From the IMG/VR virus record IMGVR_UViG_3300026097_000876, positions 62,001 to 126,000 of that record: a DNA stretch of 64,000 bases; one strand, written 5' to 3'. Shown here one piece after another: positions 4,842-21,782 of this stretch; the stretch's first letter is position 1, and every line of letters begins with the position of its first letter. A program made the position numbers and the translations under genes. The notes below the pieces were generated by a model. That model searched no databases. It was not told where the DNA came from and saw only the letters and a list, made by a program, of their open reading frames with translations.

Positions 4842-4918
4842 CTCCGCGTAGCTCAGCTGGATAGAGCATGGGATTTCTAATCCCAGGGTCGCAGGTTCGA
4901 ATCCTGCCGCGGAGGCCA
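4842..4918 (+). tRNA. trnR: tRNA-Arg(UCU)
   Basis: Cloverleaf; anticodon loop TTTCTAA; GGTTCGAATCC T-arm; encoded CCA. Confidence 0.95.
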
Positions 4919-4924
4919 AATTTA

Positions 4925-5011
4925 GCTCCCTTGGTGGAATAGGTAGACACAAGAGACTTAAAATCTCTCGCTGGAAACAGTGTCCCGGTTCGAGTCCGGG
5001 AGGGAGCACCA
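4925..5011 (+). tRNA. trnL: tRNA-Leu(UAA)
   Basis: Long variable arm; loop CTTAAAA; encoded CCA. Confidence 0.95.
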
Positions 5012-5017
5012 AGTTAA

Positions 5018-5093
5018 GGACCTATAGCTCAGTGGTTAGAGCACCCCACTCATAATGGGTTGGTCCCTGGTTCGAGTCCAGGTGGGTCCACCA
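5018..5093 (+). tRNA. trnI: tRNA with CAU anticodon, most likely Ile2 (lysidine, reads AUA)
   Basis: Loop CTCATAA; body closely resembles bacterial tRNA-Ile2 (AGCTCAGTGGTTAGAGCA...CTCATAAT...TTGGTC.CTGGTTC); CCA end. Confidence 0.85.
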
Positions 5094-14060: not shown

Positions 14061-15500
14061 TTATTCCTCGTTGTCAAGATTTGCTAAAAATGATCTAAGT
14101 TTAGTAGACTCTGCTTCTACTTTGATTTTTCCTACTGACGAGCCTTGTGATGGATCGTCATTTGTTTCCGTATTATCTACGGCAGAATTGCGTTTGAGAT
14201 TACCTACAATGTTATTCACTGTTTTGTTAGTACCAAACGAATTAGTATTTTCATCTTCGTCTTCGTCCAAGTTTCGAATACGTAATGTGTCTACATCAAA
14301 CTCTAGATCAATTTTTTGTCCCACACCACTCGACGAACGTGTCTTCATTAACTGGATCTGATAGCGTCCTCGCTCACGCATTGCTCTACTAGTAAAGATA
14401 CCAATCAAGTTATCTGCTGTGTTGATCTTAGATATACCGCCCGAGATGTGCGAGTGATCAAATTCAATTTCTTCTACTGAACTTCTGTTCAACTGAGATG
14501 CTGTAACAAAGATAGTGTTCAACTCCATAGCCAAGTTACGTAACTCTTCCGATACATACTTGTCTTTCACAAACAAGTTCTCTGCGCTAATCTTTGCGGC
14601 AATAGGATGCATCAAATCCAAGTAGTCAACTAATAGTACATCTACCTTACGTCCTGTTTTAATTTCGTATTCTTTCAAATAGCTTCTGATATCGTTTGCG
14701 TTTTTGCCTGTGGGCATATACTTGACCTGGAATGCACCCGACTTCTTGCCAATCATCTTGACTTTCATTTCTACATCGTCAATACTTTTAAACACATCGC
14801 GACTAGGAATATCTGTAGTCATCGAATCAAGACGCATACTTACTAAGTTTTCTGAAAGCTCAAATGTCAAGTACACCACGTTCAATCCTTGTAGTGCCCA
14901 GTTCACTCCCATGTTTGCTAAGAATAAACTCTTACCAGATCCTGAACCACCTGCAAAGATATTCAGTTCGCCTCTGTTAAATCCGCCAAATAATTTTTTA
15001 TCTAAACTTGGCCAGCCTGTAGATATCTGTCCGTTCTTGTCTTTAATTGCTTCAAGACGAGACTTAGGATCAGCAAAGTAATCAGTACCTAGATCTTTCT
15101 GTAGACCAATTTGCACAGCTTTCTTAACCAAGTCTTCAACAGGCCCGTACTCGCCCTTTTCTAATAAGTCAGCACTATCAAGGATTGCTTTCTCTAATGC
15201 TTTGTGTCTACTAAATGTTTCAAATTCTTTGAGCAACCAGTCATAGTGATTTTCTGCTAAGTCGCCCGGGTGTTTTAAATCTACCTGAGTTGCTGCATTT
15301 ATCATTTCAAAAGTAGGTAATGCATTGTGTTCGACAACATAATCATTTAAAAACTTTGCAGGGTCTTGTAAGCGTCTATCAAAAGATAACGGATCAAACA
15401 CAGCTTGACATCGCACAAAACTCTCGGCGTCAGTCAGCATCATTTCTAGATAGATTTTTTGTATATCGTAACCGTAGTCTGTATTTTGTCTTGTGCTCAT
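14061..15500 (-). CDS. gp41: Replicative DnaB-like helicase (T4 gp41-like)
   Basis: Walker A GGSGSGKS; LLVDYLDLM; TASQLNR; QLMKTR. Confidence 0.9.
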   Translation of the reverse strand: MSTRQNTDYGYDIQKIYLEMMLTDAESFVRCQAVFDPLSFDRRLQDPAKFLNDYVVEHNALPTFEMINAATQVDLKHPGDLAENHYDWLLKEFETFSRHKALEKAILDSADLLEKGEYGPVEDLVKKAVQIGLQKDLGTDYFADPKSRLEAIKDKNGQISTGWPSLDKKLFGGFNRGELNIFAGGSGSGKSLFLANMGVNWALQGLNVVYLTFELSENLVSMRLDSMTTDIPSRDVFKSIDDVEMKVKMIGKKSGAFQVKYMPTGKNANDIRSYLKEYEIKTGRKVDVLLVDYLDLMHPIAAKISAENLFVKDKYVSEELRNLAMELNTIFVTASQLNRSSVEEIEFDHSHISGGISKINTADNLIGIFTSRAMRERGRYQIQLMKTRSSSGVGQKIDLEFDVDTLRIRNLDEDEDENTNSFGTNKTVNNIVGNLKRNSAVDNTETNDDPSQGSSVGKIKVEAESTKLRSFLANLDNEE

Positions 15501-18401: not shown

Positions 18402-18773
18402 ATGTTAAGAAAAGATATAGAAGAAAAATTTCCGTTTTTGAGTGTTGTCACGTATGGTGGTTCCGAGTACATCGGTATCATTAATAATCAGGACAACTAT
18501 ATTACTAGTATGTATGTGTATACTGAATTACGCACCCAAGAAGATAAACAAAGGTTTATCGAACTTGGCGAAGTATGGTGGTGGGAATCAAATAGAATGA
18601 TCCCTATTAATATATTTTTAAATTCTGATATGCAACAATTTAGATATGCACAAATAACTATGAATTCTAAAGATGTTAAAATAACACTAGGGCCAACTGT
18701 AAATCTTAACAGACTACATGTTAAGAGAGTAAAACGTAAAAGTGTACAGTTAGTTAAAAAGCCTAAGAACTAA
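18402..18773 (+). CDS. Hypothetical protein, 123 aa
   Basis: ORF track. Confidence 0.75.
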   Translation: MLRKDIEEKFPFLSVVTYGGSEYIGIINNQDNYITSMYVYTELRTQEDKQRFIELGEVWWWESNRMIPINIFLNSDMQQFRYAQITMNSKDVKITLGPTVNLNRLHVKRVKRKSVQLVKKPKN

Positions 18774-19323
18774 TTTGTTCGCAAAGTAAATTCATATGTA
18801 CTACAACAGCTACAGCATACGAGAAGGCATGGCTTTTCTTAAAGTAGTACCCGCCGTCAGTCGGCTTCGTCCACACTTCCTTCATTATCGTTTCCCAACC
18901 CTTGTCCGCTAGATGTCTCTTCGCTGGACGTATTATCGCTAGTGTCGCTGCCAATTGTTCTACCGATTGCGGCTTCAATTGTTTCAGCAGTGCTCCGTGC
19001 CCGTTTAGATGAAAGACGCTTTCGCTGAAGTCTTCGTGTTCCAGAAGTTGCCATAAAGGAGTCCTTTCCATTAATTCTTGAAGATGTCGACTGTCCTTAA
19101 CGTCTTTGTAAATGTTGACGTTAAGGAAGTCTAGTTTAAAGTAGCCGCGTTCTTCTGCGGTCTTATGATCAATTGTAGATAGATTATCTACAGGATTGTG
19201 TGGAATTTCAGTAGCATAAATTCCAGTATTGTGTTTTTTCCCAGTGTCTAATTTTGCTACTCGATGTTGTAGCTTAGACAATATAATATCTCTGTTAGGA
19301 AAATCAATATCAATATCAGGCAT
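18763..19323 (-). CDS. Miniature DNA polymerase III alpha (DnaE)-like protein
   Basis: MPDIDIDF, GYFKLDFLNV, AIIRP, FKKSHAFSYA; only 186 aa. Confidence 0.8.
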   Translation of the reverse strand: MPDIDIDFPNRDIILSKLQHRVAKLDTGKKHNTGIYATEIPHNPVDNLSTIDHKTAEERGYFKLDFLNVNIYKDVKDSRHLQELMERTPLWQLLEHEDFSESVFHLNGHGALLKQLKPQSVEQLAATLAIIRPAKRHLADKGWETIMKEVWTKPTDGGYYFKKSHAFSYAVAVVVHMNLLCEQISS

Positions 19324-19804
19324 TTGCTAGTGCTTCTTTCCATTTTGAAGGAGTTACGTGTTCTTGCATAGTAACACCGTTAAGCAAATCTATCAAGCGC
19401 AAGAATGTTCTAGCTGAATAACCACTTAACCATTCCTCTCTAGTTTTTCCTAATTCGTTAGTCCAGCGAGCAAGTACTTTGCATGGCCTTGAAATTTGTA
19501 AAGTAACACCTGGAAAACTTAAACAAGATTCCCACATATCAACTTCTTGTTCGTCTACTTCAATAATTTCAGGATTAATAGCAAGCATTTTTCGCTCATT
19601 AATGTTGTTTGTTGACGAATTCATCATAGCAAAAGCCCTAAAAGTTTCTCCTATTTGATTTGCTGATACTCCAGTTCCGTTATTTTTAATTATAACATCA
19701 AACATTTCTTCTTTAAGTTCAGTAAAATTAACTGGTGCATTGTCAATATCAATCTGGTCGCACACAGTTTCTAAAAGTTTATTTGGGTGTGTAATTACTT
19801 CCAT
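19316..19804 (-). CDS. def: Peptide deformylase-like protein with a degenerate active site
   Basis: GTGVSANQIG, INPEI and ESCLSFPG present; HExxH replaced by RLIDL. Confidence 0.8.
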   Translation of the reverse strand: MEVITHPNKLLETVCDQIDIDNAPVNFTELKEEMFDVIIKNNGTGVSANQIGETFRAFAMMNSSTNNINERKMLAINPEIIEVDEQEVDMWESCLSFPGVTLQISRPCKVLARWTNELGKTREEWLSGYSARTFLRLIDLLNGVTMQEHVTPSKWKEALANA

Positions 19805-19805
19805 C

Positions 19806-20366
19806 TTATTTCTCCTCATAAAAATAGTCTACTACAAACACTCTTTTGTCTTGCCTAGTCGGATATGATCCATATAGGACTGTGCTTTTAAAAATTAACA
19901 CATCGCCTCTATTAGGTTTATAACAGAGGTCGTGTGTATTTCCTAACCCGTCATAAAGAAACGCAAAAGTTCCTCCATGCCATGTCGATTCATCGCTGTC
20001 TGGTTCTGTTAAGTAACAAATTGCACTAATTTTCTTTACAGTTTGATCACTGTGTCTGTGCGCCTTTTGCCACCCTCCTTTCTTGTAATCAACAATCCAT
20101 AGTGCGCATAAATCTGTTAGTTGTATATTTAACCCAACTTCGTCAATTTTATCCTGTAAAAAAGGTTTATACTTCCATTCGTTGAGATATGCACGTTCGT
20201 GTACATTAAATTGCTGTCCTCGATATGTAGTGGTTTGATCGCTTACATCGGTTCGAGTATCTTTAGGGAATACTTTTTTATCCCAATGAAAATCAAACTC
20301 TTCGCAATCAGGATAGTGTGATTCTATGATCCATTGGTGTTCGTTTCCTAATAAACATGTTTTCAT
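19806..20366 (-). CDS. 2OG-Fe(II) oxygenase-like protein
   Basis: HRH, SAICYL, GGTF, PNRGDVLIF, KRVFVVD; distal His appears replaced by Tyr. Confidence 0.7.
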   Translation of the reverse strand: MKTCLLGNEHQWIIESHYPDCEEFDFHWDKKVFPKDTRTDVSDQTTTYRGQQFNVHERAYLNEWKYKPFLQDKIDEVGLNIQLTDLCALWIVDYKKGGWQKAHRHSDQTVKKISAICYLTEPDSDESTWHGGTFAFLYDGLGNTHDLCYKPNRGDVLIFKSTVLYGSYPTRQDKRVFVVDYFYEEK

Positions 20367-21049
20367 AGTTTTGATTCCTTGGCTACTTCTTTTACTATTT
20401 CAACATCAGCAACTTTCTTTTTAAATTTGAGTGCCCAGTGTTGAGGATTTAATACAACATATACAAAGCCTAATTGCTCGTCATTAAACTTGTTTAGCAT
20501 TTCTTTTCCGCTTGAACAATTCAACACTAACCAAGGACTTATCTTTCCGTCCTTAATATCTCGTACAATTCGATTTAAACTTGCGTAACGAAAATAATCA
20601 TTCCACGGAGTATCTTTTTCTTCGCCCCAATCCATCATTGTTTCGATAGAACGTTTAACTGCTGTATCCATATTTTCTTTCAGGATCAAATCAATGACAT
20701 ACTTTTCGTATAGTTCATCTTTACACCAGTGATCTAATTTAATACCACTAGTTACTACATGGTCGATATAACGTTCAGGATATAATGGACGTACATTGCT
20801 AACAAATGATCCAAATTTTACAAATGCATTGTAGTACTGAGAATTGCAAAATTCTTTATATGTTTTATCCTGTTTAGCACCTGCACTTAGTTTGTAAAAT
20901 CTTTGAAATGCGTATAATCCTAGTTGTACTCGCTTTTCATTTTTCTGTAAAGCTCTGCGTTTTTTTTCGCACATATGCACAGCAAGAGTTTTTTCTCTTA
21001 CATACGCTGTGTTGCAATATTCACACACATAAGGCTTTTCTACAGACAT
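20363..21049 (-). CDS. Conserved hypothetical protein with an N-terminal C2H-type Zn finger
   Basis: YVCEYC...LAVHMC. Confidence 0.7.
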   Translation of the reverse strand: MSVEKPYVCEYCNTAYVREKTLAVHMCEKKRRALQKNEKRVQLGLYAFQRFYKLSAGAKQDKTYKEFCNSQYYNAFVKFGSFVSNVRPLYPERYIDHVVTSGIKLDHWCKDELYEKYVIDLILKENMDTAVKRSIETMMDWGEEKDTPWNDYFRYASLNRIVRDIKDGKISPWLVLNCSSGKEMLNKFNDEQLGFVYVVLNPQHWALKFKKKVADVEIVKEVAKESKL

Positions 21050-21053
21050 TTGT

Positions 21054-21782
21054 TTAAATGACCCATTCGATTGTTTTTGACGATTCAAAAATTCTATCAT
21101 ACTCTTTTGATTCCATGGTGTGTAATTTTATTTGCCAGTCATTAATAAACTCTTTTGTACTGTCAGTTATCTTATAGTGTAACACGTTTTCTACAAAATT
21201 ACAATGTTCTAATGGCAGAGGATGATCTTCAATATACCATTCATTATCTCGTAAATATTGCGGTCTTGTTTTATCCTTTTCAATATTAGGATACCAGGAT
21301 AATTCAGTAAGTGTTTTAGTTTTAGGTTCAACCCATTGTTTATACATGTCTAATATTTTAGATATTGTTTCATGTTCTAATAGTATATCGTCAGTATAAG
21401 GATTGTTGATACTAGTACTGATTACATTAGCACCAGTTGTTTTTAATGCCAATAGTGTACTTGCAATTAAATTACAATCTCGATAAACATAATATTCTAA
21501 ATCATCATGTTCGATATTCTGATTAAAGATATTTCCTCTAGTTACCCATTCGCCATTATATCTATCTTCTCTAAAAAAGTTACTCCACATAATTATAATT
21601 GTATCGTCTTTGTTAAACTTTTTTATAGCATTTGTTTCCCAGATTCTATTAGCAATTAATTGGTTACCGCTGCCTAACTTTCCACAGTTGTAACCTTCCT
21701 GAGATTCTCTAATTATAATATCTGCCCATGTAGGATAATAGTATTTTGTAAAGCTGCATCCATAAGCAAACACTCGACTCAA
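21054..21782 (-). CDS. SGNH-like hydrolase
   Basis: FAYGCSFT, GSGN, DHP motifs. Confidence 0.6.
   Translation of the reverse strand: MSRVFAYGCSFTKYYYPTWADIIIRESQEGYNCGKLGSGNQLIANRIWETNAIKKFNKDDTIIIMWSNFFREDRYNGEWVTRGNIFNQNIEHDDLEYYVYRDCNLIASTLLALKTTGANVISTSINNPYTDDILLEHETISKILDMYKQWVEPKTKTLTELSWYPNIEKDKTRPQYLRDNEWYIEDHPLPLEHCNFVENVLHYKITDSTKEFINDWQIKLHTMESKEYDRIFESSKTIEWVI

What the first reader, a model, noticed from the sequence alone, without database searches (positions are those of the whole stretch)
19316..19804. Peptide deformylase with the metal-binding HExxH motif destroyed
Motif 1 (GTGVSANQ) and motif 2 (ESCLS, Cys kept) are recognisable. Motif 3 QHExDH reads LRLIDL (TTG CGC TTG ATA GAT TTG), so both His ligands and the catalytic Glu are lost. 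The ORF is otherwise intact with a strong RBS. Known phage PDFs are active. A dead PDF could still occupy the ribosome exit-tunnel site or bind formylated N-termini and so modulate host translation.
Basis: partly seen in the sequence, partly recalled or inferred. Interest (0 to 1): 0.65.

Follow-up and report, generated by a model that had tools for sequence, protein, structure and literature searches.

The report
Catalytically dead deformylase in jumbo phage
A giant phage from a metagenome carries an intact, otherwise well-conserved copy of the enzyme peptide deformylase in which the two metal-binding histidines and the catalytic glutamate have been replaced, so it is most likely kept as a non-catalytic protein, whose job is unknown.

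Summary
Window 19316-19804 (- strand) encodes a 162-aa peptide deformylase (PDF) homologue: Pfam PF01327, 115 bits; AlphaFold pLDDT 96.5; PDF fold. Motif 1 (Gln50) and motif 2 (Cys94) are kept. Motif 3, HExxH, reads R-L-I-D-L.

It is not an artefact. Several assemblies and a Logan contig at depth 14 are identical, and the three catalytic codons differ from the relatives' codons by at least 6 of 9 bases.

All 66 distinct viral relatives, the positional orthologues included, keep HExxH. The dead motif was found in no other lineage. The closest relatives are only about 53% identical, so dN/dS cannot be measured (dS is saturated).

Indirect evidence argues against plain decay:
- The branch length and dN match those of intact orthologues.
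- All 13 other columns conserved at 95% or more are retained.
- Uniform neutral drift cannot reproduce the pattern in simulation.
- Related phages that lack a PDF at this site show no PDF remnants.

The gene sits in a hypervariable accessory slot, so it is dispensable for the phage group.

Best reading (about 0.55): a pseudo-deformylase retained for a non-catalytic role. It is a new variant of a known kind and moderately interesting.

The parts
19316..19804 (-). CDS of the PDF-like protein P0001 (162 aa; stop codon at 19316-19318)
   Evidence: Searches give the ORF. Pfam PF01327 scores 114.9 bits and PHROG 2890 'peptide deformylase' E 1.1e-26. The AlphaFold2 model has pLDDT 96.5 and pTM 0.91. 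The top Foldseek hits in the PDB are all PDFs, TM 0.81-0.89.
19385..19402 (-). Degenerate motif 3: L135-R136-L137-I138-D139-L140 in place of (Q/L/M)-H-E-x-D-H
   Evidence: Alignments to solved PDFs and to 66 distinct viral relatives. Codons are CGC TTG ATA GAT TTG against CAY GAR YTN GAT CAY in relatives. The 18-mer occurs once in the phage's own record, so there is no ectopic donor there.
19655..19678 (-). Motif 1, GTGVSANQ (Gly43, Gly45 and Gln50 kept; Ile44 to Thr and Leu46 to Val are unique to this lineage)
   Evidence: Sequence read; clade alignment.
19517..19531 (-). Motif 2, ESCLS (Glu92 and the Cys94 metal ligand kept; Ser for Gly is shared with intact close relatives)
   Evidence: Sequence read.
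19812..19816 (-). Shine-Dalgarno AGGAG, 7 nt upstream of the ATG at 19804, inside the 3' end of the upstream gene
   Evidence: Read.
19806..20366 (-). Upstream neighbour, a 2OG-Fe(II) oxygenase of 186 aa. It shares the accessory slot with the PDF gene in this subclade.
   Evidence: Pfam PF13759, 27.9 bits. PHROG 81. 85-86% identical in L003 and L004.
18763..19323 (-). Downstream neighbour, a stand-alone DNA polymerase piece of 186 aa (DnaE-like). Its start overlaps the PDF stop by 8 nt. It is the core gene on one side of the slot.
   Evidence: PHROG 11778 'DNA polymerase', E 2.2e-59. More than 543 viral contigs encode a relative, the best 80 at 71-84% identity.
20363..21100 (-). Conserved 245-aa protein of unknown function, the core gene on the other side of the slot
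   Evidence: PHROG 11058, E 9.8e-63. Found next to the polymerase piece in 76 of 80 related loci.

Best explanation
The gene encodes a pseudo-deformylase. It descends from the active PDF that related jumbo phages carry at the same site. It cannot bind the catalytic metal or carry out metal-dependent deformylation, because His136, Glu137 and His140 are replaced by Arg, Leu and Leu. It still folds as a PDF and has been kept under purifying selection.

The most likely history, by inference, runs as follows. One ligand was lost first. The remaining active-site residues were then replaced by hydrophobic or basic side chains that fill the empty metal site (H to L, E to L, H to R; also I44T, L46V, C133T in the pocket). 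The rest of the protein stayed constrained.

Its present role would therefore depend on the fold or the surface, through binding of a partner or of protein N-termini, and not on chemistry.

Shown: homology, loss of the catalytic residues, intactness of the gene, normal evolutionary rate, and uniqueness of the loss. Inferred: loss of activity, continuing selection, and a binding role.
For: Family, fold and loss:
- PF01327 at 114.9 bits; PDF fold at pLDDT 96.5.
- H, E and H of motif 3 are replaced.

The gene is a positional orthologue of intact PDFs. L003, L004 and the contig of P0006 show the same gene order: oxygenase, PDF, polymerase piece, 123-aa ORF on the other strand, 255-aa ORF, primase.

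Conservation outside the active site:
- Among 16 columns conserved at 95% or more in 66 distinct relatives, P0001 differs at exactly three, the H, E and H. The other 13 are kept. By chance that is 1 in 560.
- Outside the active-site motifs it departs from the clade consensus at 4 of 34 conserved positions, all conservatively. Intact members depart at 0-7.

No acceleration:
- Maximum-likelihood terminal branch 0.46, against 0.58 for the sister L007 and 0.42 for L008.
- dN to the outgroups L015 and L016 is 0.51 and 0.50, against 0.45-0.55 for intact orthologues.

The loss is not recent or single-step. At least 6 of the 9 bases of the three catalytic codons differ from the relatives' codons. In simulations of uniform neutral drift, no amount of divergence gave both that change and an open frame with the 13 conserved residues kept. 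The joint probability was about 2e-7 or less.

Phages of this group do not keep PDF wrecks. The 52 related loci that lack a PDF show no PDF remnant, even at E up to 50.

Translation signals and the overlaps with both neighbouring genes are intact.
Against: - There is a single lineage, with no sequence variation among the four contigs that carry it. dS to every relative is saturated. Selection after the loss therefore cannot be measured directly.
- The gene lies in a hypervariable accessory slot. Of 80 related loci, 16 are empty, 32 hold other cargo and 28 hold a PDF. A PDF at this site is therefore dispensable for the group, which raises the prior for a gene on its way out.
- A single complex multi-nucleotide event could have rewritten motif 3 recently. 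That would void the time argument.
- Cys94, Gln50 and Gly45 are catalytic in active PDFs and are still kept. This fits a recent loss as well as a structural role.
- There is no expression data (one search lists no RNA run) and no partner is known.
- About 31 kb of the roughly 332-kb genome was not examined for a second PDF.
Confidence: 0.55

Rival explanations
1. A functionless relic. An accessory PDF was knocked out recently, for example by one clustered multi-nucleotide mutation or a short recombination patch. It has not yet been deleted or disrupted.
For: - PDF is accessory at this site: of 80 related loci, 16 are empty and 32 carry other cargo.
- The loss is seen in one near-clonal population only.
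- All seven base changes lie within 15 nt.
- The other catalytic residues, Cys94 and Gln50, are still intact, as expected if little time has passed.
Against: - Seven base changes in four adjacent codons that keep the frame and the GAT codon are far more than typical clustered mutations produce.
- No donor sequence was found in the phage's own record or in the two collections scanned.
- Further unique replacements lie in motif 1, about 270 nt away (I44T, L46V). One patch cannot explain them.
- Related loci without a PDF show clean absence, not decaying copies.
- Uniform decay is rejected by simulation and by the normal branch length.
Confidence: 0.27
2. A redundant paralogue. The phage has a second, intact PDF elsewhere, and this copy was freed to lose activity, whether by neofunctionalisation or by decay.
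For: A relative without a PDF in the slot (G001, 236 kb) carries a PDF at another site, so PDF genes do sit at more than one place in this group. About 31 kb of this phage's roughly 332-kb genome was not examined.
Against: Only one PDF-family match was found in the 261.8-kb record plus about 39 kb of the adjoining contig.
Confidence: 0.1
3. Still a deformylase or a related hydrolase, using a non-canonical active site.
For: Some PDFs with altered motifs retain activity: the type 3 PDFs of T. brucei, as cited in PMC12690207. Cys94, Gln50 and Glu92 remain.
Against: The reported tolerant cases involve motifs I and II (PMC12690207). Here two of the three metal ligands and the general acid/base Glu are all replaced by residues that cannot bind a metal (Leu, Leu, Arg). 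By established PDF enzymology, single mutations at these positions abolish activity. No nearby His, Asp or Cys is newly gained in the alignment.
Confidence: 0.03
4. A sequencing or assembly artefact, or a mistranslated frame.
For: None found.
Against: The DNA is identical in JGI, ENA and Logan assemblies, with depth about 14. The flanks are in frame. The changes are multi-base substitutions, not indels.
Confidence: 0.01

Closest known systems
Active viral peptide deformylases (Vibrio phage Vp16 PDF; Synechococcus phage S-SSM7 PDF, PDB 3uwa/3uwb)
   Same: Same family and fold (Foldseek TM 0.81/0.89 to 3uwa). A small protein with a short C-terminus, encoded as an accessory gene of a large phage. 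Motifs 1 and 2 are present.
   Different: Those enzymes keep HExxH and are active (PMC5591237, PMC3660681). This protein has R-L-x-x-L and cannot bind the metal in the canonical way.
Positional orthologues in related uncultured jumbo phages (P0002-P0006; L003, L004, L007, L008)
   Same: Same gene order and 46-54% identity. They share clade features such as ESCLS, an L or M before the first His, and the KWKEA C-terminal helix.
   Different: All have HExxH. P0001 alone has H136R, E137L and H140L, plus I44T, L46V and C133T.
Inactive or weakly active bacterial PDF paralogues (S. aureus and S. pneumoniae second def genes) and type 3 PDFs
   Same: PDF homologues whose conserved motifs carry substitutions that reduce or abolish activity (PMC12690207, PMC5591237).
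   Different: Those are cellular paralogues that sit beside an active PDF, and the substitutions are reported mainly in motifs I and II. This one is phage-encoded, nests inside a clade of intact viral PDFs, and has lost motif III completely. The loss arose independently.

Membership tests
Peptide deformylase family (Pfam PF01327), by homology | Significant match to the family profile over its full length | tested here: met
   114.9 bits against a cut-off of 22.8, profile positions 3-154 of 156. 52 PDB PDFs match at E below 1e-5.
Peptide deformylase family (Pfam PF01327), by homology | PDF alpha+beta fold | tested here: met
   AlphaFold2 pLDDT 96.5. The top 50 Foldseek hits in the PDB are all PDFs, TM 0.81-0.89. 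The model is guided by an alignment of intact PDFs.
Functional peptide deformylase (EC 3.5.1.88) | Motif 1 G-phi-G-phi-A-A-x-Q, with the Gln that helps bind the formyl group | tested here: met
   GTGVSANQ. Gly43, Gly45 and Gln50 are kept. Thr44 and Val46 are unusual.
Functional peptide deformylase (EC 3.5.1.88) | Motif 2 E-G-C-L-S, with the Cys metal ligand | tested here: met
   ESCLS with Cys94 kept. Ser for Gly is shared with intact relatives.
Functional peptide deformylase (EC 3.5.1.88) | Motif 3 H-E-x-x-H: two His metal ligands and the catalytic Glu | tested here: not met
   R136-L137-I138-D139-L140.
Functional peptide deformylase (EC 3.5.1.88) | Metal binding and deformylase activity | not testable with these tools
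   This needs purified protein, or complementation of a def-conditional strain.
Ribosome-associated type 1B PDF | Long basic C-terminal helix that docks at the ribosomal exit site | tested here: inconclusive
   The predicted C-terminal helix spans only residues 152-161 and is 4-12 residues shorter than in most clade members. Ribosome binding cannot be tested here.
Type 3 or inactive cellular PDFs | Common descent with the archaeal, trypanosomatid or Gram-positive inactive PDFs | tested here: not met
   P0001 nests within a clade of intact viral PDFs, as sister to L007. Reference type 3 sequences were not included in the tree.

The most novel reading that the evidence does not exclude
The dead deformylase has been co-opted as a reader of protein N-termini. 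It would be a non-catalytic binder of formyl-Met or other N-terminal peptides, or of the ribosome exit site. It would work alongside the phage's own N-degron and chaperone genes: ClpS, ClpP, a ClpA-like unfoldase, an ATE/Bpt-like transferase, DnaJ and a PPIase. Its effect would be to decide which nascent or host proteins are protected or destroyed during infection.
Probability: 0.12. Interest if true: 0.75.

Novelty: new variant of a known kind. Interest (0 to 1): 0.42.

Why it matters
PDFs are among the most common auxiliary genes of marine and other environmental phages, and they are assumed to act by catalysis. A phage copy that has shed its catalytic centre yet evolves like its active orthologues would show that the PDF fold can serve a second, non-catalytic purpose during infection. 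It would also be a natural metal-free PDF scaffold. Comparing it with its 50%-identical active orthologues gives a ready experimental pair. If it turns out to be a relic, it is a rare snapshot of how an accessory gene dies in a phage genome.

Tried and rejected
Searches for relatives that share the loss:
- The word-based search of 5.8 billion protein clusters found nothing closer than 54% identity.
- A degenerate DNA pattern for F-L-R-L-I-D-L-L-N-G found nothing in viral contigs. In metagenome contigs only the window's own record encodes a PDF among the 25 pattern matches.

Population variation for pN/pS: none. All carriers are 100% identical around the gene, with 1 SNP in 13.4 kb elsewhere.

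Pairwise dN/dS: dS is saturated in every pair (pS 0.62-0.81), so only dN and amino-acid branch lengths were used.

Enrichment of lineage-unique changes in the active-site motifs: marginal only (Fisher p = 0.07).

A donor for a recombination patch: the 18-mer is unique in the phage's own record.

Other N-terminal processing genes: no methionine aminopeptidase and no formyltransferase in the phage's own record.

A link between the dead PDF and ClpS: rejected as specific, because a relative with an intact PDF (G002) also has ClpS.

Promoter and terminator scans were at background level. Rfam found only the three tRNAs.

Literature:
- No paper in the library links jumbo phages to PDFs.
- A search for 'deformylase' with 'pseudoenzyme' returned two unrelated papers.
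- The Margolis 2000 paper is not held.

Searches for a second PDF:
- I walked from the end of the 261.8-kb record into the adjoining contig with four look-ups. I then stopped with about 31 kb unread, because the fetch from genomes states a limit on how much of a metagenome record a session may hold.
- The records behind L113 and L203 are not held for whole-record searches.

Not run:
- The large representative-protein search.
- Complex prediction, because no specific partner is claimed.

Full report
**What is there**

Window 19316-19804 on the - strand is a 162-codon ORF.
- It matches Pfam PF01327 (Pep_deformylase) at 114.9 bits over almost the whole profile, and PHROG 2890 'peptide deformylase'.
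- Alignments to solved PDFs place residues 135-140 (L-R-L-I-D-L, window 19385-19402) on Q-H-E-x-D-H.
- Motif 1 (GTGVSANQ, 19655-19678) and motif 2 (ESCLS, 19517-19531) are present, with Gln50 and the Cys94 ligand kept.
- An AGGAG lies 7 nt before the ATG at 19804. The stop codon of the upstream gene falls between them, and the PDF stop overlaps the next gene's start by 8 nt.
- An AlphaFold2 model built on 61 aligned sequences has pLDDT 96.5. Its best PDB matches are all PDFs, TM 0.81-0.89, including the cyanophage S-SSM7 enzyme.

The Leu in place of Gln before the first His is normal for this clade. The real losses are H136R, E137L and H140L.

**Not an artefact**
- The same DNA, without a single difference, is found in a 35-kb contig of a second JGI data set, in a 278.7-kb ENA contig and in a Logan contig.
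- Laid on the region, that Logan contig of run X1 has no differences over 18943-20400 at word depth 14.
- The change is not a frameshift. It consists of at least seven base substitutions in four adjacent codons: CGC TTG ATA GAT TTG here, against CAY GAR YTN GAT CAY in 18 relatives.

**Genomic setting**

The window belongs to an uncultured jumbo phage.
- The IMG/VR record is 261.8 kb.
- Another assembly is 331.6 kb.
- A 70-kb contig of the same sample supplies the remainder.
- Distant DNA similarity is to Vibrio phage 2.275.O and to the PBECO4-like coliphages.

The gene lies in the replication module. The neighbours include a helicase, a Cupin_2-domain protein, a 245-aa protein, a 2OG-Fe(II) oxygenase, the PDF, a stand-alone DNA polymerase piece, a primase and a DnaB-like helicase.

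Three related contigs have the same order and an intact PDF at the same place. The gene is therefore a positional orthologue of active-looking PDFs.

**How unusual is the loss**
- All 66 distinct PDFs recovered from viral contigs and assemblies, at 29-54% identity, have HExxH.
- So do 28 further PDFs found next to the polymerase piece in other relatives.
- No protein closer than 54% identity exists among the 5.8 billion protein clusters searched.
- A degenerate DNA pattern for the dead motif finds only the window's own record.

The loss is confined to one sampled lineage.

**Decay or retention**

Direct dN/dS is impossible. dS is saturated against every relative, and the carriers are identical to each other. 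Five indirect lines argue against plain decay.

1. In the maximum-likelihood tree the P0001 terminal branch (0.46) is no longer than those of its intact sister L007 (0.58) or of L008 (0.42). Its dN to two outgroups (0.50-0.51) equals that of intact orthologues (0.45-0.55).
2. Of 16 columns conserved at 95% or more among the relatives, P0001 differs at exactly the three catalytic ones and keeps the other 13. By chance that is 1 in 560. Outside the active-site motifs it departs from the clade consensus at 4 of 34 conserved positions, all conservatively, which is within the range of intact members.
3. At least 6 of the 9 bases of the three catalytic codons have changed. In simulations of uniform neutral drift, no divergence level gives both that much change and an open frame with the 13 conserved residues kept. 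For example, at 0.2 substitutions per site the two probabilities are 7.5e-4 and 2.5e-4.
4. Further lineage-unique replacements sit in motif 1 and next to motif 3: I44T, L46V and C133T. From established knowledge of E. coli PDF, these positions (Ile44, Leu46, Cys129) line the substrate pocket. The pocket has therefore been remodelled rather than the whole protein degraded. That mapping rests on motif register and was not checked on coordinates.
5. Related phages that lack a PDF at this site show clean absence, with no PDF remnants at E up to 50. This suggests that dead genes are normally removed.

**Evidence on the other side**

The site is a hypervariable accessory slot between two core genes. 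Among the 80 closest loci:
- 16 have the two core genes abutting;
- 28 hold a PDF;
- 32 hold other cargo;
- 4 could not be judged.

One relative without a PDF in the slot has one elsewhere. A PDF at this site is therefore dispensable, and the gene is mobile within these genomes.

A single clustered mutational event could have rewritten motif 3 recently. The retention of Cys94 and Gln50 would fit that.

Only one PDF-family gene was found in the 261.8-kb record plus about 39 kb of the adjoining contig. About 31 kb remains unread. I stopped walking because the fetch from genomes states a holding limit for metagenome records.

**Mechanism**

By established enzymology, the PDF metal is held by the motif 2 Cys and the two motif 3 His, and the motif 3 Glu is the general acid/base. 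With Arg, Leu and Leu at these positions the protein should bind no metal and have no deformylase activity. This is inferred, not assayed.

My best reading, at about 0.55, is a pseudoenzyme kept for a role that needs the fold or the surface but not catalysis.

- The C-terminal helix is only about 10 residues long and shorter than in most relatives.
- Viral PDFs are described as lacking the ribosome-binding region (PMC5591237).
- The Met-pocket positions have changed.

Both ideas remain testable.

The main rival, at about 0.27, is a recently killed accessory gene awaiting deletion.

**Comparison with what is known**

[quoted passage not shown] Their substitutions lie mainly in motifs I and II (PMC12690207, PMC5591237). 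Viral PDFs have been reported as highly conserved in all three motifs, and as active (PMC5591237, PMC3660681).

P0001 belongs to the PDF family by descent and by fold, but it fails the defining catalytic motif. It arose inside a clade of intact viral PDFs, independently of the cellular inactive forms. I rate it a new variant of a known kind, at moderate interest.

**Context noticed along the way**

The same genome encodes ClpS, ClpP, a ClpA-like unfoldase and an ATE/Bpt-like transferase. It also encodes DnaJ and a parvulin PPIase.

ClpP and ClpS genes are known from jumbo phages (PMC7824862). ClpS also occurs in a relative with an intact PDF, so there is no specific link to the dead copy. This context does, however, frame the most novel reading that the evidence does not exclude.

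- The large representative-protein search was not used.

Noticed in passing
window 19324-20362 (between the 245-aa gene at 20363-21100 and the polymerase piece at 18763-19323); loci L115-L194: The interval between two conserved replication-module genes is a hypervariable accessory slot. Of 80 related viral contigs, 16 have the two genes abutting (gap of 2-47 nt), 28 carry a PDF from at least two PDF lineages, 32 carry other cargo of 163-1806 nt, and 4 could not be judged. Here the slot holds a 2OG-Fe(II) oxygenase plus the dead PDF.
   Followed up: yes
G000:C1:20343-20576 (ClpS), G000:C1:3468-4043 (ClpP), L202:5809-8058 (ClpA-like), L201:7059-7508 (ATE_C-like), L202:4921-5754 (DnaJ), L204:12370-12687 (PPIase): The phage encodes what looks like a complete N-degron and Clp proteolysis set: ClpS at E 3e-28, ClpP at E 2e-66, a 750-aa Clp_N plus double-AAA unfoldase, and an ATE/Bpt-family transferase just above the Pfam cut-off. 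It also encodes DnaJ and a parvulin PPIase. ClpP and ClpS genes are known from jumbo phages (PMC7824862). Whether the full set in one genome is unusual was not checked.
   Followed up: partly
window 18763-19323 (-); L203:17614-18135; L198:151-2816: DNA polymerase genes are in pieces. There is a 186-aa stand-alone DnaE-like fragment starting MPDIDIDF (PHROG 11778). A second DNA_pol3_alpha fragment of 173-183 aa lies elsewhere. A family B polymerase is split into a 219-aa exonuclease ORF and a 671-aa polymerase ORF.
   Followed up: partly
window 4842-5093 (+): A cluster of three tRNA genes: Arg(TCT), Leu(TAA) and Met(CAT). The CAT tRNA has a G1:C72 pair, so it is not a bacterial-type initiator. 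It could be an elongator Met or an Ile2 tRNA.
   Followed up: partly
L007:2998-3474: The sister PDF (53% identical, HExxH intact) has EQCLS in motif 2, with Gln where Gly or Ser is usual. It also has an even shorter C-terminus. The active site may have begun to drift before the split.
   Followed up: no
window 18402-18773 (+): A 123-aa ORF on the opposite strand, wedged between - strand genes. It is conserved at 80-82% identity in L003 and L004 and matches PHROG 11637 of unknown function.
   Followed up: no
window 18779-19326, run X1: The same metagenome run holds other contigs that are 80-85% identical to the polymerase piece. Several of them stop resembling the window at 19317-19326, the end of the PDF gene. 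Related phages with different slot content may therefore co-occur with this one.
   Followed up: partly
L203 against L204, beyond about locus position 15160: The JGI 70-kb contig and the ENA 278.7-kb contig agree up to there. After that they list different small genes, so two variants of this genome arm exist in the assemblies.
   Followed up: no
L003:8513-8695; L004:4588-4770: A 60-aa ORF lies between the PDF and the polymerase piece in the L003/L004 subclade. It is absent here and in the contig of P0006.
   Followed up: no
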